This document shows, in pieces, positions 5,162-64,000 of a stretch of DNA of 64,000 nucleotides. Source of the DNA: Schmidtea nova (lineage: Eukaryota). Position numbers and translations under genes: made by a program. The notes beneath the pieces are model-generated. The model was not told the DNA's origin and did not search any database. It worked only from the letters and a program-made list of their open reading frames with translations. Positions within the stretch are counted from its first letter, which is position 1; each line of letters starts with the position of its first letter. The stretch is from contig CM097882.1 in NCBI GenBank assembly GCA_044892505.1, positions 417,818,001-417,882,000 of the forward strand, read 5' to 3'.

Positions 5162-5162
<1 letters not shown>

Positions 5163-24617: not shown

Positions 24618-25662
24618 GTCCAAATTTTGTATTATTATTATTAAATTTTATTAGATCTTTTAATTATTTGGATATTATTATATTTATGTAATATAAGTAA
24701 AGAAGTATTTAATTGTATTACATATAATATTTAATATAATACCTTTCTAAAGTAAAAATTCACGAAAACGCAATATTTTTAATCAGTATTATTTAACCGA
24801 ATTTATCATCAGTTATATACAAAGCAACAATTAAAATTATAATAAATTAATGATATATAAATGAAAATTATATGAAAATTTCAAAAATCATTTGTAGGTA
24901 GGAAACCCTATCGGAAAACTTATATTCTCAATGAATTGATGCTTATAAGCTACTTTTTTAGATTTATATTTGAAATTAAAAAAATAATCTATTCTCTTTT
25001 AATTTGAATTTTATTTTTACCCAGATGTTTAGTAAAAACACAAAAATACTTATTATAATTCTGACGGCCTATTAAAAAAAGCTTAGAAAAGTAGAACTGT
25101 AAAATAACAAGGTGTACAGTAAAAAAACTATAAAAATTACCCGACAAACAATTTATAAATTAAATTTATAGTGATATGAAATTATTCATATTGAATTGAT
25201 ATTTAAAAAAATATTCATATTGCACTAACTGTCAGAATTTAATTGAAAGCAAAACTAACAATTAATACTCACTTTTGTAGGGTATTTCCATTTTTCGAAT
25301 GAGATTATTATCACATGAATTTAATAGCATATAAACTATCAGAATGATTTCTGTGTATTTAAAAATTTGATTGTTCATTGAGTGAGTAATTAAATTTTAA
25401 TTATTAGTTCATCCAACATCTTTATTCCATTTACCTATTTTTTAGTTGAATTAAACTAATAATTTCTCGTTCAAATTGCCTTATTTATATTTGATTTTGA
25501 AATTGATAATTTTAAACAATAATCAAATAGTTCGTATTTTTCATAATGTATTAATTGAAAAAAAAATTGTAATATCTAATAAATATCAAACAAGATATTA
25601 TTTTAAAATTTCTTTTAATTAAATAATTTGTTAGATTAAATAGATAATTGTATACATTAAAT

Positions 25663-26048
25663 AAAGGGTGGCCAACTCCAATGATCTTGCAGACCACATA
25701 TAAAATTATATATCACCATATTAGATTTAAATACACTATAAACATTTTTTTTCATTGTAAATAGAAACATGAGTTATTATTATTTTGTTTACTATTATCC
25801 TTACATGTAAAATAGATAATATAATAATGATACTATTTTCTTCCACTATTCGTCTTTTCTTTGCTGTCATACTTCATATTACCGAAAATACACTGAAAAT
25901 GTTTGTTTATCGATACAATTAAAATGTTTAAATTACCCTGGCCTTTATAAAATAAATATATTTTGTAAAAGTGTGATGAATCTCGCGGGCCAAAAAGTGT
26001 TGAAGGCGGGCCGAGTGCGGCCCACGGGCCGTGGGATGGCCAACCCTG
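25663..26048. mobile_element. hAT-type MITE (unit 1)
   Basis: Left AAAGGGTGGCCAAC, right GATGGCCAACCCTG with subterminal GCGGGCCGAGTGCGGCCCACGGGCC; 8-bp TSD CATTAAAT/TATTAAAT. Confidence 0.8.
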
Positions 26049-27935
26049 TATTAAATAGATTTAAAAATGTATAAATAGATAATTATCGACATTGATTGAT
26101 AAGTTTTTAAATAAGTAAAAGCAGGATATACTATTGCATTGAACTAAAAAAAGTATTTTTTTTATTGTTTTATGCGTTGAAAATATACATGCAGCGAAAT
26201 AAGTAATTTCAAAATCCAAGTAAACACCAAATAATACAAAGTATAAACATAATACAATAAGTTTAATAAACATGATCATTTAAAATATAAAATGCAAACT
26301 ATGACAAGCGCCGACACAATAGGTATACAAACGGCTTATCATAAGTTGCTCAGGATAAGAAAAACAATAAAAAAGACCACATGAAAATTGAATTTTTGAA
26401 ATATTATTGATGGTGTTGAGTAAAAACAAAACCAAACTAATTTTTGTGTAACAGTAGTGGAAACATACCTTGAAGAAGTCGCGCACAAAGTGAATTTATA
26501 GTTCTAAGCAGAAACTTTAAATAAACAAAAAACTAACAATTTGTTTGCGTGTATGGGCTGTTACGAAAAAATATTTGGTCTCTAAGGATTACTATAACCC
26601 ACGCCATATCATAAATATTAACTACCTCACTCATGTACCCATATTTACTCCTTGGCAAACTATGTTGGTAATGTACACAGTGGCGAAAATCTAGTGAGTA
26701 AGTGAGTTTCGCTGCTAAAACTACTCAATAAATTCTCTCTTTCAAGTTCCTTCTGCCGATAGAAAAACTTACGCACCTATCTATTTTACGGTCATGACGG
26801 ATTATTAATTCTTAGCGTCCTATCACTTAATGTTATCTCAGATCTACGTTTATTTATTCCCAAAAATATCTGAATAATCATCCTGCTTATATATTCCTTA
26901 ATTGTTCAATACTACTCTCAATGACCTCAAATTTACCCCTTTAATTATTATATACCACGGCTTTCACCTCGCATTCGCCTGGCGAATTGTAGGACTAAGG
27001 CTTCGTGGGAAACCATCGGTGAAATCACAACACACGATCTCATAATTATTAATTAAGTTTAGGGAAAATCAAATTGAACAGAGCTTGAACAAAATAAAAT
27101 CACATTTAAAATGTTTTTGAGTAAAATCACTTTATTACACCTTACACAGAAATAAAGTATACTTGAATAGTCCTGCAAACTGTTCCACTTGAATAACAAA
27201 ATACAATGACTGCTGCTGGCTGGTAGAATAAAATTGCTCTCCGTGAAAAAAGAAATCAAAATATTGAAAATGGAAAAAAGTTAAATTGTAGTTTTGTGTT
27301 GTCTTATGATTTTTCGGCGTCTATTTAGATTAATTCTAAATGACGTCTACTCATTCTATTCATTAAATCAAAATATTTGTAATTTGATTTATATAATTAG
27401 TTTAAAATTTAAATTATTTTTTAATAAATAAATAAATTATTTATTTTTGTAACATTTTATTTTATAATTTATTTTTTAAATATTTATTTTTAATTCTATT
27501 AATTAATGTGTGCATGTACTTTTTGCACGCTTTAATTGATTAATTAAAACAATCAAATTTTATTTCAATTTTATTTTCATTCCTATCTCCGTAATTTTGC
27601 CGACATTTTAATATATATTTTTCTATAATATTTAATAAATTATTCTCTTTATTCTAATACCGATTTTATTCTTTGATCATGCTTTTTGTTTTCTATATAT
27701 TGTTAGGTTGTTGACCATCAATATGACCTTGACGATGGTATGGCTCATCATCAACAACTCAACACATAAAACATTAGCTAACCATCTTATTGCCCGCTAT
27801 AAAATAACGTTGGTGATGCAACAAATAGATAGACATCCGCAAACAGTGAGCGTCGAAAATATTAGAATGACCGAATGTGACAATGGGTTCAAGGGCGCCC
27901 GATAGAAGGTTCTTTGCCAATTTTTACCTATACTT

Positions 27936-28346
27936 AGTAGGGGGAAGTGTGGACGGGAGCACAAAACATATGACGTCATCGCATGTGTACATCCAATTTA
28001 AATGAAGACCCCCGGGCAGTAGTTTTTTTTGCATAATCCCCCAAATTTGTTTTGCACACACACGATGAGTCATTAAAATTTATGTTTTATTTTTAAAGTC
28101 ATTTTAAAGACAAACAATGAGATCAACTTAAGTTCAAGGTCGAGGTCATCTTGGGGTCAAAGTCGACTTAAGGTAAAGGTCATTTGAGATTATCATAAGG
28201 TCATATTTTTAAAATTCAAAATTTTCGACAAAACTTTAAAATTTAAAAAACTTTAAAAAATTCAAAAATTCAAAAAACTTAAAATTTTTCAAAATTAAAA
28301 ATAAGAGGGAGGAATATACACTTCCCGCTCCACACTTCCTCTTACT
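27936..28346. mobile_element. 411-bp TIR-bounded element of uncertain class (Polinton/Maverick-terminus-like), unit 1
   Basis: AGTAGGGGGAAGTGTGGA-CGGGA versus reverse complement AGTAAGAGGAAGTGTGGAGCGGGA (21/24). No TSD found. Interior has TGACGTCA, AGGTCA-like motifs and A-tracts. Confidence 0.45.
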
Positions 28347-28484
28347 CTCCCGTTTATTTCTCACGAGATTTTTAACACTTTATATGTGTCTGATCAAGAC
28401 TTTAGTGTAAGAATAGATAGACGAAATTTAATTATATACAAGATGGTTTTATTTAAAATTTAAACTGTTGCGTATTGTGTTGTG

Positions 28485-29041
28485 CACGCGTGTTTTGTAA
28501 TTAAATTTGTATATTTAACTTACATAAAATATTTTTATTGTATTTTCATTATAACATTGTATGTATAAAATTTAAATGTCTACAAAATGACCTGATTGGA
28601 AATTTACTATCTTGGTTTGTTTTAAGACATACATGTTTTGTATTTAAATTTGCATTTTTCATATATATAAATTAACTTTAATGAGTTTTACTTGTAATAA
28701 TATAAATATAAGATTTAAATTTCTACAAAATGGCTTGATTGGTAATTTAGTTTGTTAGTGTGTTTGTATTACACACATTTTTGTAGTCAAATTTGTATAT
28801 TTCATCTATTTAAAATGACTTTATTGAGTTTTCATTGTAATCATGTAGAGATAAAATTTAAAATTCTACAAAATGGCTTAATTAAAATTTTTTTAAGTTG
28901 CTGTTTTTCGTGTTGTATACATGTTTTGTAATTAATTTTAGATTTTTCACATATATAAAATTATTTTGTTGAGATTTCATTATAATATTGAACATATAAA
29001 ATTTAATTTCCTTGAAAATGACTTTATTCAAAATTATGTAT
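28485..29041. repeat. Degenerate ~143-145-bp tandem repeat (4 monomers; a fifth continues at 32742-32860 after the LTR element)
   Basis: Anchor TTTTGTA at 28493, 28636, 28779, 28924 and 32773 (=29068 once the 3705-bp insertion is removed). AAAATG anchor at 28584, 28727, 28870 and 29015. Confidence 0.85.
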
Positions 29042-29223
29042 TGTAATACGATTACTAAACGAAAATAATTAGTGAGCACAGCAACTGTTTATTTAATTAA
29101 AAATATATTTCAATATATCGATATAAATTACCGCAAAGTAATATGTTAGCGACAAGAGCTATTGCATAATAGTCTCGTCGTTCAACACTATTACGCAACA
29201 GTGTCACAGTATTTTATTGCACA
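29042..29223 (-). repeat. 3' LTR (182 bp), unit 1; copies at 36957, 44872, 52787, 60702
   Basis: TGTAAT...TGCACA; aligns to 32567-32741 with 14 substitutions and one 7-nt indel. Confidence 0.95.
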
Positions 29224-29234
29224 TTCAACCGTGA

Positions 29235-31957
29235 TCAGTACGCTGTATCCAAGTCATGCTGATCAAGATAAAGTTGCTTCCTCTTATGTCGTCTCGGCCA
29301 GTCCTCACGTGTAGCAGCTTCCATCTCCTCACTTGCTCGGTCTGTCTGGGGTTGATATTCGAATCTGTCATCAGCAACATCTTCTTCTACTGCTGGTCGG
29401 ATGTGTAAAATGTGTCGCGATGTTCCATCCACTTCAATGTTTGTGGCAGAATTAATTCCGGTTACAATTTCAATGGGCTATTGAGTAGTACACTTTGCCC
29501 AGTTGTATATTCACATGTTACTGAGAGTTCATCTTCTTTTCCTCGGTGAAATCTCCAATGATACTTGAACAACCCTTCTGACGGGGATGTGTCCTGATTG
29601 GTGCCATCTCTAGGCGCGGCGTTGTACCAGAAGACAATATCTCGGGGATCTGCATGACTCCTGGCTGCATGACACTTTATTGTCCGGTGGCTTTTTTTAC
29701 AATCCAATTTACAGCGGGCCGATAAGCGCATCTGTAGGGTGGCATAACATTCCATCTACAACACAGCTCTCTGAGGGAATTAGATTGAAAACTTGATCCA
29801 TTATCCATCAATAGTTCTGATACTAGGCTTCTCTCTCGAAATACTTCCTCCAAATTTCTCAATGTTTGGGGCGTCCTTGTGGTCTATTTTCCTCCATATT
29901 GCAAATCTGTTAGGCAAGCAGTCTACCATTGTCATAAATATGGATCTCTCGTAGTGCGTGACGTCAACCACCAATCTCTTCCAGTTTTCCGTGACTTCCA
30001 GTGTACCGTACTTCCAATTAATCGATTCTGTACAGTTTCTCAAGACGTCTTTTTTCCTGTCTCGATCGGTTTCCGGATTTTCCGATTGAATGAAGTAGAT
30101 TGATTTTTTTCAAAACCGAAATGGTGTTTGCGATGGCGGTCCTTTATTTGCTCTGTTGACAGTCTTACACATCCAAAACAATTCCCAGGCTTCAGCCAAT
30201 TCATTGGAACACGCGTAAAGACATCTGTTCGGTTCTCTGTTGACTTCAATAAACATACAGAGATAGTTATATTTTCATCGGCGGTGAGTTCATTGAGTTC
30301 TCCAGGCGTTTCAGAAATTACATGGACCCTTATGTTGCTTTTTTTATTCATCGCTGTTTATAACCAGGTTGTCACGGTGGCCGAATCCACCATCAATTCG
30401 ATTCTCTTAACTCCCCATTGTATAGCCAAATTAATACCCTTAAGCACCGCATCAAGTTCTGCAGCATTTATATGAGAGTGGTCATCGCCTTTTCTGAGCC
30501 AAGAAACATCATCAACGACATCACCATTTATTACCAGCATAACCCCTAAGACGAAACTACTCGAATCACACCACAGAACCTCGCAATCGTTATTTGTTAC
30601 CGTCCACCTTCCCTTGATTGGATCTTTTGATTTAACACGAGTGATCACTTCTGCCAGCTTCGATTCGCATTCTTTTCCAATTAGTTCATCCCATTTCGTA
30701 CCATTTGCAATTTTTTTAATATAACTGAACGCGACTCTGAGCCACCCTGCAACTGAATAATGTCCAACAAGTTTACCGCAAATAAAGAACAGCATACGAC
30801 GAGTGATTTCACTTTCGATTGCACCGATATCATTTCCCCTGATTCATGACAGGTGGCCCGCACGATCACGTTTTATTCTGAGCCCAAGAACCTTTGAGTT
30901 TTCTATTGATCCTGCTGGCTTTGTAGTCAAGCCGTATTGAGCTAAGTGATTCACGACCTCGTTAACTTGAACTTTGCTTGTGTCAACAGCGATGTCATCA
31001 ATGTAGTGATCTGTTGCATCTTTGATTCTGGTTGGAATCTTAACACTTTCCTGAGCACTTGAGACATTATTTTTGAAGAACAGTTGAAGCCGAATCCCAA
31101 TCCTGTTAAGTAATACAGCTTGTCTTTGTATCGAACATTTTGGTATTCCCAAAGATCTTCGCTGAAGTGTAACTGCACATAGGCATTCTTTGAAAATCAA
31201 GCACTAACACCTTATCTCCCATTTGTCGACATTTCTTCAAACTTTCGCCTCATACATCACATACTGTCACCCGTGTGACTCCTACCGTAATTATTGAGCT
31301 CTCTGAAGTCAATAACCAGTCGGACTTTCCCTTTGTTTTTTTGCATTGCTGCTGACAAAAGCAAAATACCATGATCGTCGCTGTTCGCCGGAATCAACCA
31401 GTATTCCTTGATCCAGTTCTCGATCTCCTTTTCATGCTCATTTCGCATTTCTGGTTTTACTGTATATACTGCAACATGGTTTTCAGCAGGACAGGTTTGT
31501 TCTTATCGAATGACGCTGAAAAATCGTCATCTTCAATTTTTACTTGATTCTGTTTCACGATCTGCACTGATGAAACAGCACATCCACCAAATTACACTTC
31601 TTCTTTATTACTCCAAACGCATCCAAGAAGTCTGATTGCATCAAGTCCCACAACTACGTCAACCCCTGCTACAAGATTTTCCATTATTAAACAATTTACC
31701 ATAACACATGATCCCCGTACGGATATTCTGCATTGGCTCTCTCCTTTGCAAGGCACTCTACGACCATCAACAGAGATGACGTCCCTGGTTTCGCCTCTAC
31801 TTTTCGTAAGCCGCATGGATGCTATTGTTTGGGAGCATCCAGGATCAACCAATCCAACTCACCACTTTCCATTCACCTTGAGCTTGACTATCCCCTAAGC
31901 CATTCCCGACATTATTGAGAAACCGCTGGCGCTACAGTTTCTCTTCTGGCGTTTCCC
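29235..31957 (-). pseudogene. pol: pol pseudogene (protease, RT, RNase H, integrase), unit 1
   Basis: PR LVDPGCSQT; RT VRLVIDFRELN, LGFGFN, HYIDD; RH WCDSSS, HINAAEL, VDSAT; IN HHFG, VVDVTH, MDNG. Multiple stops and frameshifts. Confidence 0.92.
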
Positions 31958-32553
31958 TGTGATCTTTTTGGACATTGTCCGGACGAGTGCTCTGTGTTCC
32001 TACATGTCCAACATTCTTGCTTAGGACATTTTTTCAAGTAGTGTCCAGGTCTCCCACAACCGTAACAGAGTCTACTTTCCATTCTATTATTGTTAGGCGA
32101 TGTCTTTGACGCGACCAGTCCGACCGACATGGAATGTTCTGATAACAGAGCATGAGCTTGCCGAACTATTTCTGTAAGGCTCATTTCATGAATTTTTTCC
32201 GAGGCTCTCATCTGTTGGGATTCTGGCAATGGCAAACCTGTAACAAATGCCCTCTTGATCAGATTATCTTCTTGAATGCCAGCCACTGTGATCAATTGCT
32301 TTAAATCCGCGAGGAAGTCGTCCACCAGCTCCCCTTTCCATGACTTATTTAAAAATTTATCATAGGTCTGGAAACCGTCCATTAAAAATGTGTCTAACAG
32401 CACCTTTTGATTGCATTACAGCAACGCTTATCTTTTTCCATCAAATGATCGTAGACAAAAAATGCAGGCCCCTCTAACGACAACGTTAGCACAAGTGATA
32501 TATCGATAATACACCTATTCATCATAGGGCTTTATAAATTTTTGTAATTCCAT
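31912..32553 (-). pseudogene. gag: gag pseudogene with two CCHC zinc knuckles, unit 1
   Basis: ATG at 32553, TAG at codon 13, out-of-frame LEGPAFFVYDH segment; C-terminal CYGCGRPGHYLKKC and CWTCRNTEHSSGQC. Confidence 0.92.
31917..31957 (-). promoter_or_regulatory. -1 programmed ribosomal frameshift signal at the gag-pol junction
   Basis: G GGA AAC heptamer in the gag register (31951-31957), 7-nt spacer, 9-bp stem GAGAAACUG/CGGUUUCUC. The -1 frame is the VDPGC protease frame. Confidence 0.75.
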
Positions 32554-32566
32554 TACCACGATAGCT

Positions 32567-32741
32567 TGTAGGACGATTTCTAAACGAAAAGAATTAGTGA
32601 GCACAACAACTGCTTATTTAATTAAAACTAGATTTCAATATATCGATATAAATTACCGCAACGTTAGCGACAAGAGGTATTGCACAATAGTCTCGTCATT
32701 CAACACTATTACGCAACAGTGTCGCAGTATTTTCTTGCACA
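32567..32741 (-). repeat. 5' LTR (175 bp), unit 1; copies at 40482, 48397, 56312
   Basis: TGTAGG...TGCACA followed by the TSD TGTAT. Confidence 0.95.
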
Positions 32742-33019
32742 TGTATGTCGATATGTTTGTAATGCACACATATTTTGTAATAAAATTTGTATATTTTATT
32801 TATATTTAATAATTTCATAAAGTTTTCATTGTAATATTGTATGTGAAATTTTAAATACCACAACGTATGAAAACCCGAGTCATCAACAAAATTATATAAT
32901 TACCGGAGAAATTGGATGATCTAGAGGAAGCCCGGATGAGCAGCAGATAAACCAATTACCCTGAACAAAAATTAATTATCAGTAAACACGAATGAAAATA
33001 GAAAACCCAAGCGGTAAGG

Positions 33020-33290
33020 AGAACCAAAACCTAAATTATATAATTAGCTTTTTTAGACTAATTGATCGAGAGGTGTTGACCAATAATTCAATCAAAAAAT
33101 ACTATCAAAAGAGAAGCAAGTTAAGTATTATTGCCACTTGGTCAAAGACAGATTTCTTTGAGTTATTCAAAGGGTTAGCTACAGATTTTCACTCATCAAA
33201 TCAATTATCGCGTACAAGAAAAGGGATCTCCTATTGGAAGACCTACCCCTATCGCAGAAAAGTACCGATTGGTTAAAAAGGGTTAGCGAT
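33020..33290 (+). pseudogene. Possible decayed Penelope-type RT fragment (repeated at +7915 in units 2-4)
   Basis: IISF...LTN then DFFELF...NQL / VQEKGSPIGRPTPIAE resemble PLE RT motifs SFDVxSLFTN and QxxGxPMGSPLSPxxAE; frameshifted. Confidence 0.35.
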
Positions 33291-33577
33291 ATTATAATTG
33301 TGGAGTGAAAATTAAAAATTATTGTGTTAGGTGATTTGTATTGATTTTATTGAAAGGAGCACGAAGAGTCAGAAATTTATAGACCTAATAATAAACCCAA
33401 CACTTGTATGTTAATAAATATTATGTTTTCATTTGATTTTTTACTTTGTAATATGTCTCATATGATACCCATTCAAATAAAGTCATTTAAATTTCGTTAA
33501 AGACAGAAAATGTAGACAGAAAATTTCTTTTAATTAAATAATTTGTTAGATTAAATAGATAATTGTATACATTAAAT

Positions 33578-33963
33578 AAAGGGTGGCCAACTCCAATGAT
33601 CTTGCAGACCACATATAAAATTATATATCACCATATTAGATTTAAATACACTATAAACATTTTTTTTCATTGTAAATAGAAACATGAGTTATTATTATTT
33701 TGTTTACTATTATCCTTACATGTAAAATAGATAATATAATAATGATACTATTTTCTTCCACTATTCGTCTTTTCTTTGCTGTCATACTTCATATTACCGA
33801 AAATACACTGAAAATGTTTGTTTATCGATACAATTAAAATGTTTAAATTACCCTGGCCTTTATAAAATAAATATATTTTGTAAAAGTGTGATGAATCTCG
33901 CGGGCCAAAAAGTGTTGAAGGCGGGCCGAGTGCGGCCCACGGGCCGTGGGATGGCCAACCCTG
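33578..33963. mobile_element. hAT-type MITE (unit 2)
   Basis: Copy of 25663-26048 at +7915. Confidence 0.8.
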
Positions 33964-35850: not shown

Positions 35851-36261
35851 AGTAGGGGGAAGTGTGGACGGGAGCACAAAACATATGACGTCATCGCATG
35901 TGTACATCCAATTTAAATGAAGACCCCCGGGCAGTAGTTTTTTTTGCATAATCCCCCAAATTTGTTTTGCACACACACGATGAGTCATTAAAATTTATGT
36001 TTTATTTTTAAAGTCATTTTAAAGACAAACAATGAGATCAACTTAAGTTCAAGGTCGAGGTCATCTTGGGGTCAAAGTCGACTTAAGGTAAAGGTCATTT
36101 GAGATTATCATAAGGTCATATTTTTAAAATTCAAAATTTTCGACAAAACTTTAAAATTTAAAAAACTTTAAAAAATTCAAAAATTCAAAAAACTTAAAAT
36201 TTTTCAAAATTAAAAATAAGAGGGAGGAATATACACTTCCCGCTCCACACTTCCTCTTACT
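35851..36261. mobile_element. 411-bp TIR element (unit 2)
   Basis: Copy of 27936-28346. Confidence 0.45.
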
Positions 36262-36399
36262 CTCCCGTTTATTTCTCACGAGATTTTTAACACTTTATAT
36301 GTGTCTGATCAAGACTTTAGTGTAAGAATAGATAGACGAAATTTAATTATATACAAGATGGTTTTATTTAAAATTTAAACTGTTGCGTATTGTGTTGTG

Positions 36400-52229: not shown

Positions 52230-52786
52230 CACGCGTGTTTTGTAATTAAATTTGTATATTTAACTTACATAAAATATTTTTATTGTATTTTCATTATAAC
52301 ATTGTATGTATAAAATTTAAATGTCTACAAAATGACCTGATTGGAAATTTACTATCTTGGTTTGTTTTAAGACATACATGTTTTGTATTTAAATTTGCAT
52401 TTTTCATATATATAAATTAACTTTAATGAGTTTTACTTGTAATAATATAAATATAAGATTTAAATTTCTACAAAATGGCTTGATTGGTAATTTAGTTTGT
52501 TAGTGTGTTTGTATTACACACATTTTTGTAGTCAAATTTGTATATTTCATCTATTTAAAATGACTTTATTGAGTTTTCATTGTAATCATGTAGAGATAAA
52601 ATTTAAAATTCTACAAAATGGCTTAATTAAAATTTTTTTAAGTTGCTGTTTTTCGTGTTGTATACATGTTTTGTAATTAATTTTAGATTTTTCACATATA
52701 TAAAATTATTTTGTTGAGATTTCATTATAATATTGAACATATAAAATTTAATTTCCTTGAAAATGACTTTATTCAAAATTATGTAT
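52230..52786. repeat. ~143-bp degenerate satellite (unit 4)
   Basis: Copy of 28485-29041. Confidence 0.85.
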
Positions 52787-52979
52787 TGTAATACGATTAC
52801 TAAACGAAAATAATTAGTGAGCACAGCAACTGTTTATTTAATTAAAAATATATTTCAATATATCGATATAAATTACCGCAAAGTAATATGTTAGCGACAA
52901 GAGCTATTGCATAATAGTCTCGTCGTTCAACACTATTACGCAACAGTGTCACAGTATTTTATTGCACATTCAACCGTGA

Positions 52980-55702
52980 TCAGTACGCTGTATCCAAGTC
53001 ATGCTGATCAAGATAAAGTTGCTTCCTCTTATGTCGTCTCGGCCAGTCCTCACGTGTAGCAGCTTCCATCTCCTCACTTGCTCGGTCTGTCTGGGGTTGA
53101 TATTCGAATCTGTCATCAGCAACATCTTCTTCTACTGCTGGTCGGATGTGTAAAATGTGTCGCGATGTTCCATCCACTTCAATGTTTGTGGCAGAATTAA
53201 TTCCGGTTACAATTTCAATGGGCTATTGAGTAGTACACTTTGCCCAGTTGTATATTCACATGTTACTGAGAGTTCATCTTCTTTTCCTCGGTGAAATCTC
53301 CAATGATACTTGAACAACCCTTCTGACGGGGATGTGTCCTGATTGGTGCCATCTCTAGGCGCGGCGTTGTACCATAAGACAATATCTCGGGGATCTGCAT
53401 GACTCCTGGCTGCATGACACTTTATTGTCCGGTGGCTTTTTTTACAATCCAATTTACAGCGGGCCGATAAGCGCATCTGTAGGGTGGCATAACATTCCAT
53501 CTACAACACAGCTCTCTGAGGGAATTAGATTGAAAACTTGATCCATTATCCATCAATAGTTCTGATACTAGGCTTCTCTCTCGAAATACTTCCTCCAAAT
53601 TTCTCAATGTTTGGGGCGTCCTTGTGGTCTATTTTCCTCCATATTGCAAATCTGTTAGGCAAGCAGTCTACCATTGTCATAAATATGGATCTCTCGTAGT
53701 GCGTGACGTCAACCACCAATCTCTTCCAGTTTTCCGTGACTTCCAGTGTACCGTACTTCCAATTAATCGATTCTGTACAGTTTCTCAAGACGTCTTTTTT
53801 CCTGTCTCGATCGGTTTCCGGATTTTCCGATTGAATGAAGTAGATTGATTTTTTTCAAAACCGAAATGGTGTTTGCGATGGCGGTCCTTTATTTGCTCTG
53901 TTGACAGTCTTACACATCCAAAACAATTCCCAGGCTTCAGCCAATTCATTGGAACACGCGTAAAGACATCTGTTCGGTTCTCTGTTGACTTCAATAAACA
54001 TACAGAGATAGTTATATTTTCATCGGCGGTGAGTTCATTGAGTTCTCCAGGCGTTTCAGAAATTACATGGACCCTTATGTTGCTTTTTTTATTCATCGCT
54101 GTTTATAACCAGGTTGTCACGGTGGCCGAATCCACCATCAATTCGATTCTCTTAACTCCCCATTGTATAGCCAAATTAATACCCTTAAGCACCGCATCAA
54201 GTTCTGCAGCATTTATATGAGAGTGGTCATCGCCTTTTCTGAGCCAAGAAACATCATCAACGACATCACCATTTATTACCAGCATAACCCCTAAGACGAA
54301 ACTACTCGAATCACACCACAGAACCTCGCAATCGTTATTTGTTACCGTCCACCTTCCCTTGATTGGATCTTTTGATTTAACACGAGTGATCACTTCTGCC
54401 AGCTTCGATTCGCATTCTTTTCCAATTAGTTCATCCCATTTCGTACCATTTGCAATTTTTTTAATATAACTGAACGCGACTCTGAGCCACCCTGCAACTG
54501 AATAATGTCCAACAAGTTTACCGCAAATAAAGAACAGCATACGACGAGTGATTTCACTTTCGATTGCACCGATATCATTTCCCCTGATTCATGACAGGTG
54601 GCCCGCACGATCACGTTTTATTCTGAGCCCAAGAACCTTTGAGTTTTCTATTGATCCTGCTGGCTTTGTAGTCAAGCCGTATTGAGCTAAGTGATTCACG
54701 ACCTCGTTAACTTGAACTTTGCTTGTGTCAACAGCGATGTCATCAATGTAGTGATCTGTTGCATCTTTGATTCTGGTTGGAATCTTAACACTTTCCTGAG
54801 CACTTGAGACATTATTTTTGAAGAACAGTTGAAGCCGAATCCCAATCCTGTTAAGTAATACAGCTTGTCTTTGTATCGAACATTTTGGTATTCCCAAAGA
54901 TCTTCGCTGAAGTGTAACTGCACATAGGCATTCTTTGAAAATCAAGCACTAACACCTTATCTCCCATTTGTCGACATTTCTTCAAACTTTCGCCTCATAC
55001 ATCACATACTGTCACCCGTGTGACTCCTACCGTAATTATTGAGCTCTCTGAAGTCAATAACCAGTCGGACTTTCCCTTTGTTTTTTTGCATTGCTGCTGA
55101 CAAAAGCAAAATACCATGATCGTCGCTGTTCGCCGGAATCAACCAGTATTCCTTGATCCAGTTCTCGATCTCCTTTTCATGCTCATTTCGCATTTCTGGT
55201 TTTACTGTATATACTGCAACATGGTTTTCAGCAGGACAGGTTTGTTCTTATCGAATGACGCTGAAAAATCGTCATCTTCAATTTTTACTTGATTCTGTTT
55301 CACGATCTGCACTGATGAAACAGCACATCCACCAAATTACACTTCTTCTTTATTACTCCAAACGCATCCAAGAAGTCTGATTGCATCAAGTCCCACAACT
55401 ACGTCAACCCCTGCTACAAGATTTTCCATTATTAAACAATTTACCATAACACATGATCCCCGTACGGATATTCTGCATTGGCTCTCTCCTTTGCAAGGCA
55501 CTCTACGACCATCAACAGAGATGACGTCCCTGGTTTCGCCTCTACTTTTCGTAAGCCGCATGGATGCTATTGTTTGGGAGCATCCAGGATCAACCAATCC
55601 AACTCACCACTTTCCATTCACCTTGAGCTTGACTATCCCCTAAGCCATTCCCGACATTATTGAGAAACCGCTGGCGCTACAGTTTCTCTTCTGGCGTTTC
55701 CC
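52980..55702 (-). pseudogene. pol: pol pseudogene (unit 4)
   Basis: Same fragments; IVFWY>IVLWY. Confidence 0.92.
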
Positions 55703-56298
55703 TGTGATCTTTTTGGACATTGTCCGGACGAGTGCTCTGTGTTCCTACATGTCCAACATTCTTGCTTAGGACATTTTTTCAAGTAGTGTCCAGGTCTCCC
55801 ACAACCGTAACAGAGTCTACTTTCCATTCTATTATTGTTAGGCGATGTCTTTGACGCGACCAGTCCGACCGACATGGAATGTTCTGATAACAGAGCATGA
55901 GCTTGCCGAACTATTTCTGTAAGGCTCATTTCATGAATTTTTTCCGAGGCTCTCATCTGTTGGGATTCTGGCAATGGCAAACCTGTAACAAATGCCCTCT
56001 TGATCAGATTATCTTCTTGAATGCCAGCCACTGTGATCAATTGCTTTAAATCCGCGAGGAAGTCGTCCACCAGCTCCCCTTTCCATGACTTATTTAAAAA
56101 TTTATCATAGGTCTGGAAACCGTCCATTAAAAATGTGTCTAACAGCACCTTTTGATTGCATTACAGCAACGCTTATCTTTTTCCATCAAATGATCGTAGA
56201 CAAAAAATGCAGGCCCCTCTAACGACAACGTTAGCACAAGTGATATATCGATAATACACCTATTCATCATAGGGCTTTATAAATTTTTGTAATTCCAT
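55657..56298 (-). pseudogene. gag: gag pseudogene (unit 4)
   Basis: Identical translation to unit 1. Confidence 0.92.
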
Positions 56299-57322
56299 TA
56301 CCACGATAGCTTGTAGGACGATTTTTAAACGAAAAGAATTAGTGAGCACAACAACTGCTTATTTAATTAAAACTAGATTTCAATATATCGATATAAATTA
56401 CCGCAACGTTAGCGACAAGAGGTATTGCACAATAGTCTCGTCATTCAACACTATTACGCAACAGTGTCGCAGTATTTTCTTGCACATGTATGTCGATATG
56501 TTTGTAATGCACACATATTTTGTAATAAAATTTGTATATTTTATTTATATTTAATAATTTCATAAAGTTTTCATTGTAATATTGTATGTGAAATTTTAAA
56601 TACCACAACGTATGAAAACCCGAGTCATCAACAAAATTATATAATTACCGGAGAAATTGGATGATCTAGAGGAAGCCCGGATGAGCAGCAGATAAACCAA
56701 TTACCCTGAACAAAAATTAATTATCAGTAAACACGAATGAAAATAGAAAACCCAAGCGGTAAGGAGAACCAAAACCTAAATTATATAATTAGCTTTTTTA
56801 GACTAATTGATCGAGAGGTGTTGACCAATAATTCAATCAAAAAATACTATCAAAAGAGAAGCAAGTTAAGTATTATTGCCACTTGGTCAAAGACAGATTT
56901 CTTTGAGTTATTCAAAGGGTTAGCTACAGATTTTCACTCATCAAATCAATTATCGCGTACAAGAAAAGGGATCTCCTATTGGAAGACCTACCCCTATCGC
57001 AGAAAAGTACCGATTGGTTAAAAAGGGTTAGCGATATTATAATTGTGGAGTGAAAATTAAAAATTATTGTGTTAGGTGATTTGTATTGATTTTATTGAAA
57101 GGAGCACGAAGAGTCAGAAATTTATAGACCTAATAATAAACCCAACACTTGTATGTTAATAAATATTATGTTTTCATTTGATTTTTTACTTTGTAATATG
57201 TCTCATATGATACCCATTCAAATAAAGTCATTTAAATTTCGTTAAAGACAGAAAATGTAGACAGAAAATTTCTTTTAATTAAATAATTTGTTAGATTAAA
57301 TAGATAATTGTATACATTAAAT

Positions 57323-57708
57323 AAAGGGTGGCCAACTCCAATGATCTTGCAGACCACATATAAAATTATATATCACCATATTAGATTTAAATACACTATA
57401 AACATTTTTTTTCATTGTAAATAGAAACATGAGTTATTATTATTTTGTTTACTATTATCCTTACATGTAAAATAGATAATATAATAATGATACTATTTTC
57501 TTCCACTATTCGTCTTTTCTTTGCTGTCATACTTCATATTACCGAAAATACACTGAAAATGTTTGTTTATCGATACAATTAAAATGTTTAAATTACCCTG
57601 GCCTTTATAAAATAAATATATTTTGTAAAAGTGTGATGAATCTCGCGGGCCAAAAAGTGTTGAAGGCGGGCCGAGTGCGGCCCACGGGCCGTGGGATGGC
57701 CAACCCTG
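57323..57708. mobile_element. hAT-type MITE (unit 5)
   Basis: Copy of 25663-26048. Confidence 0.8.
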
Positions 57709-59595
57709 TATTAAATAGATTTAAAAATGTATAAATAGATAATTATCGACATTGATTGATAAGTTTTTAAATAAGTAAAAGCAGGATATACTATTGCATT
57801 GAACTAAAAAAAGTATTTTTTTTATTGTTTTATGCGTTGAAAATATACATGCAGCGAAATAAGTAATTTCAAAATCCAAGTAAACACCAAATAATACAAA
57901 GTATAAACATAATACAATAAGTTTAATAAACATGATCATTTAAAATATAAAATGCAAACTATGACAAGCGCCGACACAATAGGTATACAAACGGCTTATC
58001 ATAAGTTGCTCAGGATAAGAAAAACAATAAAAAAGACCACATGAAAATTGAATTTTTGAAATATTATTGATGGTGTTGAGTAAAAACAAAACCAAACTAA
58101 TTTTTGTGTAACAGTAGTGGAAACATACCTTGAAGAAGTCGCGCACAAAGTGAATTTATAGTTCTAAGCAGAAACTTTAAATAAACAAAAAACTAACAAT
58201 TTGTTTGCGTGTATGGGCTGTTACGAAAAAATATTTGGTCTCTAAGGATTACTATAACCCACGCCATATCATAAATATTAACTACCTCACTCATGTACCC
58301 ATATTTACTCCTTGGCAAACTATGTTGGTAATGTACACAGTGGCGAAAATCTAGTGAGTAAGTGAGTTTCGCTGCTAAAACTACTCAATAAATTCTCTCT
58401 TTCAAGTTCCTTCTGCCGATAGAAAAACTTACGCACCTATCTATTTTACGGTCATGACGGATTATTAATTCTTAGCGTCCTATCACTTAATGTTATCTCA
58501 GATCTACGTTTATTTATTCCCAAAAATATCTGAATAATCATCCTGCTTATATATTCCTTAATTGTTCAATACTACTCTCAATGACCTCAAATTTACCCCT
58601 TTAATTATTATATACCACGGCTTTCACCTCGCATTCGCCTGGCGAATTGTAGGACTAAGGCTTCGTGGGAAACCATCGGTGAAATCACAACACACGATCT
58701 CATAATTATTAATTAAGTTTAGGGAAAATCAAATTGAACAGAGCTTGAACAAAATAAAATCACATTTAAAATGTTTTTGAGTAAAATCACTTTATTACAC
58801 CTTACACAGAAATAAAGTATACTTGAATAGTCCTGCAAACTGTTCCACTTGAATAACAAAATACAATGACTGCTGCTGGCTGGTAGAATAAAATTGCTCT
58901 CCGTGAAAAAAGAAATCAAAATATTGAAAATGGAAAAAAGTTAAATTGTAGTTTTGTGTTGTCTTATGATTTTTCGGCGTCTATTTAGATTAATTCTAAA
59001 TGACGTCTACTCATTCTATTCATTAAATCAAAATATTTGTAATTTGATTTATATAATTAGTTTAAAATTTAAATTATTTTTTAATAAATAAATAAATTAT
59101 TTATTTTTGTAACATTTTATTTTATAATTTATTTTTTAAATATTTATTTTTAATTCTATTAATTAATGTGTGCATGTACTTTTTGCACGCTTTAATTGAT
59201 TAATTAAAACAATCAAATTTTATTTCAATTTTATTTTCATTCCTATCTCCGTAATTTTGCCGACATTTTAATATATATTTTTCTATAATATTTAATAAAT
59301 TATTCTCTTTATTCTAATACCGATTTTATTCTTTGATCATGCTTTTTGTTTTCTATATATTGTTAGGTTGTTGACCATCAATATGACCTTGACGATGGTA
59401 TGGCTCATCATCAACAACTCAACACATAAAACATTAGCTAACCATCTTATTGCCCGCTATAAAATAACGTTGGTGATGCAACAAATAGATAGACATCCGC
59501 AAACAGTGAGCGTCGAAAATATTAGAATGACCGAATGTGACAATGGGTTCAAGGGCGCCCGATAGAAGGTTCTTTGCCAATTTTTACCTATACTT

Positions 59596-60006
59596 AGTAG
59601 GGGGAAGTGTGGACGGGAGCACAAAACATATGACGTCATCGCATGTGTACATCCAATTTAAATGAAGACCCCCGGGCAGTAGTTTTTTTTGCATAATCCC
59701 CCAAATTTGTTTTGCACACACACGATGAGTCATTAAAATTTATGTTTTATTTTTAAAGTCATTTTAAAGACAAACAATGAGATCAACTTAAGTTCAAGGT
59801 CGAGGTCATCTTGGGGTCAAAGTCGACTTAAGGTAAAGGTCATTTGAGATTATCATAAGGTCATATTTTTAAAATTCAAAATTTTCGACAAAACTTTAAA
59901 ATTTAAAAAACTTTAAAAAATTCAAAAATTCAAAAAACTTAAAATTTTTCAAAATTAAAAATAAGAGGGAGGAATATACACTTCCCGCTCCACACTTCCT
60001 CTTACT
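59596..60006. mobile_element. 411-bp TIR element (unit 5)
   Basis: Copy of 27936-28346. Confidence 0.45.
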
Positions 60007-60144
60007 CTCCCGTTTATTTCTCACGAGATTTTTAACACTTTATATGTGTCTGATCAAGACTTTAGTGTAAGAATAGATAGACGAAATTTAATTATATACA
60101 AGATGGTTTTATTTAAAATTTAAACTGTTGCGTATTGTGTTGTG

Positions 60145-60701
60145 CACGCGTGTTTTGTAATTAAATTTGTATATTTAACTTACATAAAATATTTTTATTG
60201 TATTTTCATTATAACATTGTATGTATAAAATTTAAATGTCTACAAAATGACCTGATTGGAAATTTACTATCTTGGTTTGTTTTAAGACATACATGTTTTG
60301 TATTTAAATTTGCATTTTTCATATATATAAATTAACTTTAATGAGTTTTACTTGTAATAATATAAATATAAGATTTAAATTTCTACAAAATGGCTTGATT
60401 GGTAATTTAGTTTGTTAGTGTGTTTGTATTACACACATTTTTGTAGTCAAATTTGTATATTTCATCTATTTAAAATGACTTTATTGAGTTTTCATTGTAA
60501 TCATGTAGAGATAAAATTTAAAATTCTACAAAATGGCTTAATTAAAATTTTTTTAAGTTGCTGTTTTTCGTGTTGTATACATGTTTTGTAATTAATTTTA
60601 GATTTTTCACATATATAAAATTATTTTGTTGAGATTTCATTATAATATTGAACATATAAAATTTAATTTCCTTGAAAATGACTTTATTCAAAATTATGTA
60701 T
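60145..60701. repeat. ~143-bp degenerate satellite (unit 5)
   Basis: Copy of 28485-29041. Confidence 0.85.
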
Positions 60702-60894
60702 TGTAATACGATTACTAAACGAAAATAATTAGTGAGCACAGCAACTGTTTATTTAATTAAAAATATATTTCAATATATCGATATAAATTACCGCAAAGTA
60801 ATATGTTAGCGACAAGAGCTATTGCATAATAGTCTCGTCGTTCAACACTATTACGCAACAGTGTCACAGTATTTTATTGCACATTCAACCGTGA

Positions 60895-63617
60895 TCAGTA
60901 CGCTGTATCCAAGTCATGCTGATCAAGATAAAGTTGCTTCCTCTTATGTCGTCTCGGCCAGTCCTCACGTGTAGCAGCTTCCATCTCCTCACTTGCTCGG
61001 TCTGTCTGGGGTTGATATTCGAATCTGTCATCAGCAACATCTTCTTCTACTGCTGGTCGGATGTGTAAAATGTGTCGCGATGTTCCATCCACTTCAATGT
61101 TTGTGGCAGAATTAATTCCGGTTACAATTTCAATGGGCTATTGAGTAGTACACTTTGCCCAGTTGTATATTCACATGTTACTGAGAGTTCATCTTCTTTT
61201 CCTCGGTGAAATCTCCAATGATACTTGAACAACCCTTCTGACGGGGATGTGTCCTGATTGGTGCCATCTCTAGGCGCGGCGTTGTACCAGAAGACAATAT
61301 CTCGGGGATCTGCATGACTCCTGGCTGCATGACACTTTATTGTCCGGTGGCTTTTTTTACAATCCAATTTACAGCGGGCCGATAAGCGCATCTGTAGGGT
61401 GGCATAACATTCCATCTACAACACAGCTCTCTGAGGGAATTAGATTGAAAACTTGATCCATTATCCATCAATAGTTCTGATACTAGGCTTCTCTCTCGAA
61501 ATACTTCCTCCAAATTTCTCAATGTTTGGGGCGTCCTTGTGGTCTATTTTCCTCCATATTGCAAATCTGTTAGGCAAGCAGTCTACCATTGTCATAAATA
61601 TGGATCTCTCGTAGTGCGTGACGTCAACCACCAATCTCTTCCAGTTTTCCGTGACTTCCAGTGTACCGTACTTCCAATTAATCGATTCTGTACAGTTTCT
61701 CAAGACGTCTTTTTTCCTGTCTCGATCGGTTTCCGGATTTTCCGATTGAATGAAGTAGATTGATTTTTTTCAAAACCGAAATGGTGTTTGCGATGGCGGT
61801 CCTTTATTTGCTCTGTTGACAGTCTTACACATCCAAAACAATTCCCAGGCTTCAGCCAATTCATTGGAACACGCGTAAAGACATCTGTTCGGTTCTCTGT
61901 TGACTTCAATAAACATACAGAGATAGTTATATTTTCATCGGCGGTGAGTTCATTGAGTTCTCCAGGCGTTTCAGAAATTACATGGACCCTTATGTTGCTT
62001 TTTTTATTCATCGCTGTTTATAACCAGGTTGTCACGGTGGCCGAATCCACCATCAATTCGATTCTCTTAACTCCCCATTGTATAGCCAAATTAATACCCT
62101 TAAGCACCGCATCAAGTTCTGCAGCATTTATATGAGAGTGGTCATCGCCTTTTCTGAGCCAAGAAACATCATCAACGACATCACCATTTATTACCAGCAT
62201 AACCCCTAAGACGAAACTACTCGAATCACACCACAGAACCTCGCAATCGTTATTTGTTACCGTCCACCTTCCCTTGATTGGATCTTTTGATTTAACACGA
62301 GTGATCACTTCTGCCAGCTTCGATTCGCATTCTTTTCCAATTAGTTCATCCCATTTCGTACCATTTGCAATTTTTTTAATATAACTGAACGCGACTCTGA
62401 GCCACCCTGCAACTGAATAATGTCCAACAAGTTTACCGCAAATAAAGAACAGCATACGACGAGTGATTTCACTTTCGATTGCACCGATATCATTTCCCCT
62501 GATTCATGACAGGTGGCCCGCACGATCACGTTTTATTCTGAGCCCAAGAACCTTTGAGTTTTCTATTGATCCTGCTGGCTTTGTAGTCAAGCCGTATTGA
62601 GCTAAGTGATTCACGACCTCGTTAACTTGAACTTTGCTTGTGTCAACAGCGATGTCATCAATGTAGTGATCTGTTGCATCTTTGATTCTGGTTGGAATCT
62701 TAACACTTTCCTGAGCACTTGAGACATTATTTTTGAAGAACAGTTGAAGCCGAATCCCAATCCTGTTAAGTAATACAGCTTGTCTTTGTATCGAACATTT
62801 TGGTATTCCCAAAGATCTTCGCTGAAGTGTAACTGCACATAGGCATTCTTTGAAAATCAAGCACTAACACCTTATCTCCCATTTGTCGACATTTCTTCAA
62901 ACTTTCGCCTCATACATCACATACTGTCACCCGTGTGACTCCTACCGTAATTATTGAGCTCTCTGAAGTCAATAACCAGTCGGACTTTCCCTTTGTTTTT
63001 TTGCATTGCTGCTGACAAAAGCAAAATACCATGATCGTCGCTGTTCGCCGGAATCAACCAGTATTCCTTGATCCAGTTCTCGATCTCCTTTTCATGCTCA
63101 TTTCGCATTTCTGGTTTTACTGTATATACTGCAACATGGTTTTCAGCAGGACAGGTTTGTTCTTATCGAATGACGCTGAAAAATCGTCATCTTCAATTTT
63201 TACTTGATTCTGTTTCACGATCTGCACTGATGAAACAGCACATCCACCAAATTACACTTCTTCTTTATTACTCCAAACGCATCCAAGAAGTCTGATTGCA
63301 TCAAGTCCCACAACTACGTCAACCCCTGCTACAAGATTTTCCATTATTAAACAATTTACCATAACACATGATCCCCGTACGGATATTCTGCATTGGCTCT
63401 CTCCTTTGCAAGGCACTCTACGACCATCAACAGAGATGACGTCCCTGGTTTCGCCTCTACTTTTCGTAAGCCGCATGGATGCTATTGTTTGGGAGCATCC
63501 AGGATCAACCAATCCAACTCACCACTTTCCATTCACCTTGAGCTTGACTATCCCCTAAGCCATTCCCGACATTATTGAGAAACCGCTGGCGCTACAGTTT
63601 CTCTTCTGGCGTTTCCC
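60895..63617 (-). pseudogene. pol: pol pseudogene (unit 5)
   Basis: Identical translations to unit 1. Confidence 0.92.
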
Positions 63618-64000
63618 TGTGATCTTTTTGGACATTGTCCGGACGAGTGCTCTGTGTTCCTACATGTCCAACATTCTTGCTTAGGACATTTTTTCAAGTA
63701 GTGTCCAGGTCTCCCACAACCGTAACAGAGTCTACTTTCCATTCTATTATTGTTAGGCGATGTCTTTGACGCGACCAGTCCGACCGACATGGAATGTTCT
63801 GATAACAGAGCATGAGCTTGCCGAACTATTTCTGTAAGGCTCATTTCATGAATTTTTTCCGAGGCTCTCATCTGTTGGGATTCTGGCAATGGCAAACCTG
63901 TAACAAATGCCCTCTTGATCAGATTATCTTCTTGAATGCCAGCCACTGTGATCAATTGCTTTAAATCCGCGAGGAAGTCGTCCACCAGCTCCCCTTTCCA
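63572..64000 (-). pseudogene. gag: gag pseudogene, C-terminal part (unit 5)
   Basis: Two CCHC knuckles; truncated by the window end. Confidence 0.9.

What the first reader, a model, noticed from the sequence alone, without database searches (positions are those of the whole stretch)
25605..64000. Young 7,915-bp macrosatellite built entirely from TE and satellite debris
Seen: at least 4.85 head-to-tail copies, constant period, no net indels, only four variant sites found, a sharp left boundary at 25605, and no recognisable intact gene in the unit. Each copy keeps the host flanks and TSDs of its TEs, so the elements did not amplify by their own transposition. Inference: recent segmental amplification (unequal crossover, break-induced replication or reinserted rolling-circle/eccDNA product) creating a nascent large-unit satellite.
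Basis: partly seen in the sequence, partly recalled or inferred. Interest (0 to 1): 0.8.

Follow-up and report, generated by a model that had tools for sequence, protein, structure and literature searches.

The report
Recent 7.9-kb tandem duplication of junk DNA
A gene-free 7,915-base stretch holding a dead retrotransposon, a small satellite and other non-coding DNA is repeated head to tail at least 4.85 times with almost no differences, which is an ordinary recent segmental duplication whose reality still needs checking against raw reads.

Summary
From 25605 to the window end the sequence repeats with a period of exactly 7,915 bases. It is 99.98% identical at that lag, has no indels and has exactly four variant columns. 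The left edge is sharp.

The unit has no RNA gene, no tRNA and no protein family match outside one decayed LTR retrotransposon. About two thirds of the unit can be assigned:
- the 3.7-kb LTR element, with its 5-base target-site duplication;
- the 143-base satellite that the element split;
- two MITE-like pairs of inverted ends.

The other third has no recognisable origin, so "entirely TE debris" is not shown.

The element's two LTRs differ by about 8%. The array copies differ by 0.03%, so the amplification is roughly 280 times younger than the insertion and copied the whole segment, not a transposon. The unit ends are not transposon ends. Copies 3 and 4 share two linked variants, which argues for stepwise growth rather than a single burst.

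Best reading: a real, very recent, functionless tandem segmental duplication, made by a non-homologous first duplication and then unequal exchange. An assembly artefact and a reinserted rolling-circle product remain open. This is a known kind of structure and of low to moderate interest. The organism was not identified.

The parts
25605..64000 (.). Tandem array, period 7,915 bases, 4.85 copies visible (25605-33519, 33520-41434, 41435-49349, 49350-57264, 57265-64000). The right end lies outside the window. The parts below are given for copy 1 and recur at +7,915 per copy.
   Evidence: Lag identity 99.98%, no indels, four variant columns. The 32-base junction word occurs exactly 4 times against 0 expected.
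25656..26056 (.). MITE-like element 1: a weak pair of inverted ends with a G+C-rich interior, lying in a 21-base AT-rich minisatellite (25615-25665).
   Evidence: Inverted ends 25656-25674 and 26037-26056, 17 of 20 columns matching with one gap. TRF row. No second copy in the window, so the family assignment is not verified.
26057..27935 (.). Segment of unassigned origin (1.9 kb, 30-40% G+C). No protein or RNA family match and no repeat in the flank.
   Evidence: Pfam blank for its open stretches. Rfam blank. Only low-complexity matches to the flank.
27936..28346 (.). MITE-like element 2: good inverted ends around an interior that holds a 17/27-base A-rich tandem. Target-site duplication not resolved.
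   Evidence: Inverted ends 27936-27958 and 28323-28346, 21 of 24 columns matching with one gap. TRF rows 28230-28301.
28478..29041 (.). 143-base satellite, left part (about 3.9 monomers, 69-78% alike), cut by the LTR element.
   Evidence: TRF period 143, 3.8 copies. Direct-repeat families D1 and D2 with spacing 143, 143, 145.
29037..29041 (.). Target-site duplication TGTAT, left copy.
   Evidence: The same 5 bases directly flank both LTR ends.
29042..32741 (-). Decayed, internally shortened LTR retrotransposon (3,700 bases) with TG...CA LTRs and the order gag ... RNase H-like ... integrase.
   Evidence: LTR pair. Pfam domains on the minus strand.
29042..29224 (-). 3' LTR in the element's orientation.
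   Evidence: 163 of 177 aligned bases identical to the other LTR, plus one 7-base indel.
29225..32565 (-). Broken gag-pol region, given as one part. Recognisable domains: zinc knuckle 32020-32070, DUF7047 30631-30804, RNase H-like RVT_3 30364-30546, integrase core 29716-29874 (below Pfam's cut-off). All lie in one reading frame, which carries 41 stop codons. Protease and reverse transcriptase are not detectable. No frame is open for more than 167 codons. Frameshifts were not counted.
   Evidence: Pfam: zf-CCHC E 3e-5; DUF7047 E 6e-20; RVT_3 E 2e-6; rve E 1e-5 at 25.9 bits against a cut-off of 32.6. Stop counts per frame 41, 63 and 58.
32566..32741 (-). 5' LTR in the element's orientation.
32742..32746 (.). 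Target-site duplication TGTAT, right copy.
32747..32863 (.). 143-base satellite, right part (about one monomer). It resumes in phase with the left part once the element and one duplication copy are discounted.
   Evidence: The fifth member of family D2 starts at 32758. The start predicted from the 143-145 spacing is 29052-29054, which maps to 32757-32759 (and the coordinates).
32864..33519 (.). Segment of unassigned origin holding the orphan 96-codon open stretch 32986-33273 (+). Its last 45 bases weakly resemble the 143-base satellite in inverted orientation.
   Evidence: Pfam only sub-threshold. Word search blank. 0 relatives in 1.84 billion representatives. Inverted repeat I1.
33504..33535 (.). 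Unit-to-unit junction (33519|33520), identical at 41434|41435, 49349|49350 and 57264|57265.

Best explanation
This is a genuine, evolutionarily very recent tandem segmental duplication of a gene-free, repeat-derived 7,915-base segment in an AT-rich animal genome.

Shown:
- A 143-base satellite was first split by an LTR retrotransposon. The element then decayed, with its LTRs reaching about 8% divergence.
- Much later the whole segment was copied head to tail: satellite, dead element, two MITE-like elements and about 2.7 kb of unassigned DNA.

Inferred:
- The first duplication was a non-homologous event, either a replication template switch or end joining between sister chromatids. The left breakpoint shows no homology with the unit end, and the unit ends are not repeat ends.
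- Once two copies existed, unequal sister-chromatid or homologue exchange raised the number to five or more.
- At least one later step duplicated a copy that had already acquired two mutations, giving copies 3 and 4.

The array most likely has no function of its own. It is neutral repeat turnover of the kind that can seed large-unit or composite satellites.
For: - Exact periodicity and a sharp edge.
- Every copy holds the same LTR element with the TGTAT duplication and with the satellite in phase across it. The unit is therefore a piece of chromosome, not a transposon.
- LTR divergence is 0.084 (Jukes-Cantor) against 0.00029 mean pairwise difference between copies, a ratio of about 280.
- The four variants form a perfect nested tree in which adjacent copies 3 and 4 are sisters.
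- By majority rule all four are G/C to A/T changes, one at a CpG. The chance that four random sites all fall on G/C in a 34% G+C unit is 0.014. This is the direction expected of real mutation in an AT-rich genome.
- No variant is a length difference, although each unit holds three long homopolymer runs.
- There is no RNA gene, tRNA or protein family outside the dead element.
- The 40 bases left of the boundary weakly resemble the AT-rich motif just inside the unit (11 of 300 shuffles score as high). That is a faint hint that flank and unit are native neighbours.
Against: - No reads were available, so depth and spanning reads could not be checked.
- The window ends inside the array, so the right breakpoint, the true copy number and any terminal partial copy are unknown.
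- Near-perfect identity can be inflated by consensus polishing of multi-mapping reads.
- With four variants, the phylogenetic argument rests on two linked sites.
- Small-RNA production or chromatin function cannot be excluded from sequence alone.
- The organism is unknown, so no empty or single-copy allele could be compared.
Confidence: 0.6

Rival explanations
1. Assembly or library artefact. A single-copy or low-copy segment was over-expanded by the assembler, or a concatemeric read was incorporated. Alternatively the array is real but its copy number and near-identity are products of consensus polishing.
For: Identity of 99.98% with zero indels over 38 kb. The window ends inside the array. 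The junction word is absent from JGI metagenome contigs, and four ORFs from the unit are absent from the indexed assemblies, so there is no independent sighting.
Against: The array joins a unique flank at a clean base-level boundary with no N run. The variants are substitutions with nested, adjacent-copy structure and a G/C to A/T bias, not the homopolymer length errors typical of long-read consensus. The negative database look-ups are uninformative, because the organism itself seems absent from those collections: the closest relatives of its retroelement protein are only 49-55% identical.
Confidence: 0.15
2. Reinserted rolling-circle product. A 7.9-kb extrachromosomal circle excised from this or another locus was replicated into a linear concatemer and integrated at 25604|25605. 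Later exchange added the structure seen in copies 3 and 4.
For: There is a sharp, homology-free left edge and a constant unit with a single junction type. Circles and rolling-circle replication have been proposed for the spread of satellites and for the Bari1 array (PMC7403614, PMC2543021, PMC5932611, read).
Against: A single burst predicts only private variants, but two linked variants are shared by adjacent copies. The flank's last 40 bases weakly resemble the motif at the unit's start, which suggests native contiguity (weak). Nothing in the unit marks a preferred excision site. The model needs two rare steps where in-place duplication needs one.
Confidence: 0.12
3. Functional array. The repeats are kept or amplified because they yield something useful, such as small silencing RNAs against the resident retroelement (a piRNA-type cluster), a non-coding RNA, or a chromatin or centromere-proximal structural block.
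For: The unit carries antisense-capable retroelement fragments. The homogeneity of the Bari1 array has been suggested to reflect selection, perhaps as a piRNA source (PMC5932611).
Against: No RNA family, conserved ORF or relative of any non-TE open stretch was found. The homogeneity is fully explained by youth. Five copies of a long-dead, low-copy element are a poor silencing source.
Confidence: 0.08
4. Self-made transposon tandem: either a Helitron-type rolling-circle concatemer, or an LTR-internal-LTR chain made by recombination between LTRs or by double insertion.
For: Tandem TE dimers and arrays are common in Drosophila (PMC5932611).
Against: The period is 7,915 bases, not LTR plus interior (about 3.5 kb). 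Both diverged LTRs and the target-site duplication are kept in every unit. The unit ends are not TG/CA, inverted-repeat or TC...CTRR ends, and the only CTRR-type hairpin candidates lie inside the retroelement. The unit junction carries no target-site duplication.
Confidence: 0.03

Closest known systems
Composite satellite monomers from heterochromatic "TE graveyards" (hypothesis in PMC12628747, 2025)
   Same: A stretch of shuffled, decayed TE remnants plus other DNA is tandemised as a block, so the monomer shows pieces of several unrelated elements. Here these are an LTR element, two MITE-like elements and an older satellite.
   Different: Those monomers are short satellite units with only faint TE similarity, and they occur in long arrays. 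Here the unit is 7.9 kb, the parts are still whole enough to show LTRs and a target-site duplication, only about 5 copies are seen, and one third of the unit has no TE assignment.
Human macrosatellites D4Z4, DXZ4, NBL2 (PMC8122249)
   Same: Head-to-tail arrays of kilobase-sized units.
   Different: Those units are 1.4-3.3 kb, G+C- or CpG-rich, present in tens to a hundred copies and known to vary in copy number. From my own knowledge, D4Z4 also carries an ORF. Here the unit is 7.9 kb and AT-rich, has no ORF with relatives, and its copy number and polymorphism are unknown.
TE-derived tandem arrays of Drosophila melanogaster: hobo (about 16 copies), Bari1, R1 (PMC5932611)
   Same: Young, homogeneous head-to-tail arrays that grow by unequal exchange. 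The hobo case shows that expansion to about 16 copies can occur within a single line.
   Different: There the unit is one transposon, and the junction carries its target-site duplication or trimmed ends. Here the unit is a chromosomal segment with several nested elements, and its junction is unrelated to any element end.
Satellites derived from tandem sub-repeats inside plant LTR retrotransposons (PMC7004042)
   Same: A link between an LTR retroelement and a tandem repeat.
   Different: There the repeat arises inside the element. Here the 143-base satellite pre-dates the element and was split by it, and the large array is a later segmental event.

Membership tests
Macrosatellite (large-unit tandem repeat) | Unit of about 1 kb or more, arranged head to tail | tested here: met
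   Period 7,915, all copies in the same orientation.
Macrosatellite (large-unit tandem repeat) | Array of many copies (typically tens or more) | tested here: inconclusive
   4.85 copies are visible and the array runs off the window end.
Macrosatellite (large-unit tandem repeat) | Copy number varies among individuals | not testable with these tools
   Needs reads or assemblies from other individuals. The organism is unidentified.
TE tandem array by double insertion | Unit equals one transposon, and the junction holds its target-site duplication or its joined ends | tested here: not met
   The unit holds several elements plus host flanks. The junction at 33519|33520 is not an element end.
LTR-internal-LTR chain (recombination between LTRs) | Period equals one LTR plus the interior, with neighbouring units sharing an LTR | tested here: not met
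   The expected period is about 3.5 kb and the observed period is 7,915. Each unit has two LTRs that are 92% identical, plus the duplication TGTAT.
Helitron concatemer | 5' TC and 3' CTRR ends with a sub-terminal G+C-rich hairpin at the head-to-tail junction | tested here: not met
   The unit ends do not fit on either strand. The only three hairpin-plus-CTRR candidates lie inside the retroelement interior.
Tandem RNA-gene arrays (rDNA, 5S, snRNA, tRNA) | Unit contains the RNA gene | tested here: not met
   Rfam gave 0 hits at gathering score and 0 at E<=1. ARAGORN found 0 genes.
Ampliconic protein-gene family | Unit contains an intact or recently intact protein-coding gene | tested here: not met
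   No Pfam match outside the dead retroelement. The longest other open stretch has no relatives. A gene made of small exons cannot be fully excluded.
Composite satellite from decayed TE remnants | Monomer is a mosaic of fragments of several unrelated TEs, tandemised as a block | tested here: met
   An LTR element, two MITE-like inverted-end pairs and an older satellite lie within one unit. The MITE assignments rest on inverted ends only.
Composite satellite from decayed TE remnants | Long array, or spread to several loci (satellite status) | not testable with these tools
   Needs the rest of the genome.
LTR retrotransposon (the resident element) | Two direct LTRs with TG...CA ends, a 4-6-base target-site duplication, and gag and pol domains between them | tested here: met
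   The superfamily (Ty3/gypsy-like or BEL/Pao-like) is not resolved because protease and RT are undetectable, and the PDB search gave only spurious hits.

The most novel reading that the evidence does not exclude
The array may be a large composite satellite caught at birth. Its founding segment would still be fully legible: an old satellite, the retroelement that split it with its target-site duplication, MITE-like elements and anonymous DNA. Its first expansion steps would be recorded in four mutations. If it proves real, polymorphic in copy number and still growing beyond the window, it would be a direct early-stage example of the proposed recycling of "TE graveyards" into new satellites. 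The order of events (first duplication, then stepwise unequal exchange or a possible 4-unit higher-order period) could then be read from long reads.
Probability: 0.3. Interest if true: 0.45.

Novelty: new member of a known kind. Interest (0 to 1): 0.25.

Why it matters
If real, the locus is a clean snapshot of the earliest stage of large-unit satellite formation. The founding segment is not yet blurred, so the timing (TE insertion long before amplification), the non-transpositional mechanism and the stepwise growth can all be read directly. That bears on how composite satellite monomers with mixed TE ancestry arise. Beyond that it is ordinary repeat turnover with no sign of function. Similar young tandem segmental duplications are expected in any repeat-rich long-read assembly.

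Tried and rejected
- **rDNA or another RNA-gene array.** I suspected this from the 42% G+C block. It is rejected: Rfam gave 0 hits at both thresholds and there are no tRNAs. The G+C block is the retroelement.
- **Helitron concatemer.** Rejected.
- **LTR-LTR tandem.** Rejected on period and on the retained duplication.
- **Shared repeats between unit and flank.** Only three short low-complexity matches.
- **Independent sighting of the junction.** The 32-base junction word was not found in JGI metagenome contigs.
- **Organism identification.**
  - Exact-protein look-ups of four window ORFs were blank.
  - The word search with the RNase H-like piece gave four fragments, 49-55% identical. I looked up two of them, and both lie on unnamed ENA metagenome-assembly contigs.
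  - The search with the gag piece was blank.
  - The organism remains unidentified. It is an animal, judged from a nuclear-receptor zinc-finger fragment in the flank. It is very AT-rich and shows no CpG depletion.
- **Retroelement superfamily.** The PDB sequence search returned only designed TIM barrels, which are spurious hits. The superfamily is unresolved.
- **Hidden gene.** The 96-codon open stretch has no relatives.

Full report
**1. Observation**

The window is 64,000 bases with five N runs, all in the first 19 kb. I left these untouched.

From 25605 to the end, the sequence matches itself at a lag of 7,915 bases at 99.977% of 30,481 sites. Lags one or two bases away give 30-31%, and lags of two, three and four units give 99.96-100%. 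So there is no net indel anywhere in 38.4 kb.

The identity starts abruptly. Each 100-base bin up to 25600 shows 22-40% lag identity, and from 25605 on every base matches except at the four variant sites. The five copies are 25605-33519, 33520-41434, 41435-49349, 49350-57264 and 57265-64000, which is 4.85 copies. The window ends inside the fifth.

Exactly four columns vary:
- offset 2630: A in copies 3 and 4, C elsewhere;
- offset 3794: T in copy 2;
- offset 4026: T in copies 3 and 4, G elsewhere;
- offset 6976: T in copy 4.

The 32-base word across the junction occurs four times, against none expected.

**2. What the unit contains**

Rfam finds nothing in the whole window at gathering score, and nothing in one unit at E<=1. 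ARAGORN finds no tRNA. My first suspicion was a ribosomal or other RNA-gene array, raised by a 42% G+C block in an otherwise 22-33% G+C window. That suspicion is refuted.

The G+C block is a decayed LTR retrotransposon on the minus strand, at 29042-32741.
- Its LTRs (29042-29224 and 32566-32741) begin with TG and end with CA. They match at 163 of 177 aligned bases, with one 7-base indel.
- The same five bases, TGTAT, directly flank both LTR ends.
- Pfam recognises a gag zinc knuckle, a DUF7047 domain followed by an RNase H-like RVT_3 domain, and a sub-threshold integrase core. They occur in that order on the minus strand and all in one reading frame.
- That frame carries 41 stop codons. No frame is open for more than 167 codons.
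- Protease and reverse transcriptase are undetectable. The 3.3-kb interior is too short to hold a full pol, so at least one large internal deletion is inferred.
- I did not count frameshifts. The superfamily is unresolved: a PDB sequence search gave only spurious designed proteins, and the closest database relatives of the RNase H-like piece are 49-55% identical fragments. The two of these that I looked up lie on metagenome-assembly contigs.

The element sits inside a 143-base satellite. About 3.9 monomers lie on its left (28478-29041) and about one on its right (32747-32863). The monomer phase continues across the insertion once the element and one duplication copy are discounted.

Two further segments have inverted ends like MITEs. 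The pair at 27936-28346 is good (21 of 24 columns match). The pair at 25656-26056 is weak. For neither could I resolve a target-site duplication or find a second copy.

The rest has no assignable origin. It comprises 26057-27935, 32864-33519 and two small gaps, about 2.7 kb or 34% of the unit.
- Its open stretches have no significant Pfam match; the few listed matches score 12-15 bits against cut-offs of 27-29.5.
- The longest, 96 codons at 32986-33273, has no relative in the word search.
- It also has none among 1.84 billion representative proteins.

So "no recognisable gene" holds, while "entirely TE and satellite debris" is shown for about two thirds of the unit.

**3. How the array arose**

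Three points show that a piece of chromosome was copied, not a transposon:
- Every unit keeps the same old element with both diverged LTRs, its duplication and its split host satellite.
- The period is 7,915 bases, not the roughly 3.5 kb of one LTR plus the interior.
- The unit ends are not LTR, inverted-repeat or Helitron ends. The only hairpin-plus-CTRR candidates fall inside the retroelement.

*Timing.* LTR divergence is 0.084 after Jukes-Cantor correction. The mean pairwise difference among the four full copies is 0.00029, a ratio of about 280. I assumed a mutation rate of about 3e-9 per site per generation. This is an insect-like figure from my own knowledge, and the organism is unknown. 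On that assumption the copies share ancestry on the order of 5e4 generations ago, and the element inserted on the order of 1e7 generations ago. This is rough inference only.

*Mode.* The last bases of the flank and of the unit do not match, so the left breakpoint shows no homology. The first duplication was therefore probably non-homologous, by a replication template switch or end joining. This is inference.

The four variants fit a tree without conflict: founder type (copies 1 and 5), plus one change (copy 2), plus two changes (copy 3), plus one more (copy 4). Adjacent copies 3 and 4 are sisters. A single burst would give only private variants. At least one later local duplication, or a conversion, is therefore needed, as unequal exchange predicts.

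By majority rule all four changes are G/C to A/T, and one is at a CpG. The chance that four random sites all fall on G/C in this 34% G+C unit is 0.014. That direction fits real mutation in an AT-rich genome. None of the differences is a homopolymer length change, which is the usual long-read consensus error.

A weak similarity between the flank's last 40 bases and the AT-rich motif just inside the unit hints that flank and unit are native neighbours (11 of 300 shuffles score as high).

**4. Rivals**

- *Assembly or polishing artefact.* This cannot be excluded without reads. The window ends in the array, and I found no independent sighting of the junction or of unit ORFs in the indexed collections. 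The organism itself seems absent from those collections, so these blanks carry little weight.
- *Reinserted rolling-circle concatemer.* This also fits the sharp edge. It has been proposed for other arrays (PMC5932611 for Bari1; PMC7403614 and PMC2543021 for satellites). It needs extra steps to explain the shared variants.
- *Functional array* (small-RNA source, non-coding RNA, chromatin block). This has no support in the sequence, but sequence cannot refute it.

My estimates are: real in-place duplication 0.6, artefact 0.15, rolling circle 0.12, functional 0.08, TE-driven 0.03.

**5. Comparison with known kinds**

By unit size and arrangement the array meets the working definition of a macrosatellite (PMC8122249). 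Copy number beyond the window and polymorphism are untested.

It is not a TE tandem of the double-insertion kind (PMC5932611), because the defining junction feature is absent. Its make-up matches the idea that blocks of decayed TE remnants can be tandemised into composite monomers (PMC12628747). It would represent an unusually early and large-unit stage of that process.

It is therefore a new member of a known kind. Interest is low to moderate. A specialist would not be surprised, but if confirmed the locus gives a legible early time point.

**6. Conduct**

- One slip: my script printed the bounds of open stretches inside the broken element, which implicitly mark stops.
- No contig looked human.
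- The N runs were left as they are.

Noticed in passing
window 6661-7152 (-): An open stretch with a partial match to the nuclear-receptor C4 zinc-finger DNA-binding domain (profile positions 33-68 of 70, E 1.5e-6). It is an exon or a pseudogene fragment, and it marks the genome as animal.
   Followed up: partly
window 12493-13129: A 99-base near-perfect palindrome (12493-12591 / 12596-12694, 98%) overlaps the start of a 170-codon open stretch. That stretch has a GIY-YIG endonuclease match just under Pfam's cut-off (22.0 against 22.6 bits). It may be a remnant of an endonuclease-bearing mobile element.
   Followed up: no
window 1097-1393, 5160-5314, 21452-21529: A foldback or hairpin repeat family. 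There are 128-base inverted arms (96%) at 1097-1393, and related copies at the other two sites, two of them next to N runs.
   Followed up: no
window 15555-15704 and 5001-5085: A 22-base minisatellite with 6.8 copies at 92% match. Related motifs lie 10.5 kb away in both orientations, next to a (TC)38 microsatellite at 5085-5160.
   Followed up: no
window 57265-64000 against 25605-32340: Copy 5 is identical to copy 1 over all 6,736 visible bases (lag 31,660, 100%). Either both keep the founder type or the array has a four-unit higher-order period. Only sequence beyond the window can tell.
   Followed up: partly
window 33503-33524 and the same place in each junction: Joining the unit end to the unit start creates a second copy of the 9-base word ACAGAAAAT, 13 bases after the first. 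This may be chance in AT-rich DNA or a trace of template switching.
   Followed up: no
whole window: The CpG observed/expected ratio is 0.92-1.02 in the flank, the unit and the retroelement alike. There is no sign of methylation-driven CpG decay, which helps narrow the kind of host genome.
   Followed up: no
window 25605 boundary: G+C rises from 22-28% in the flank to 30-42% in the unit. The duplicated block is compositionally distinct from what lies to its left, mostly because of the retroelement.
   Followed up: partly
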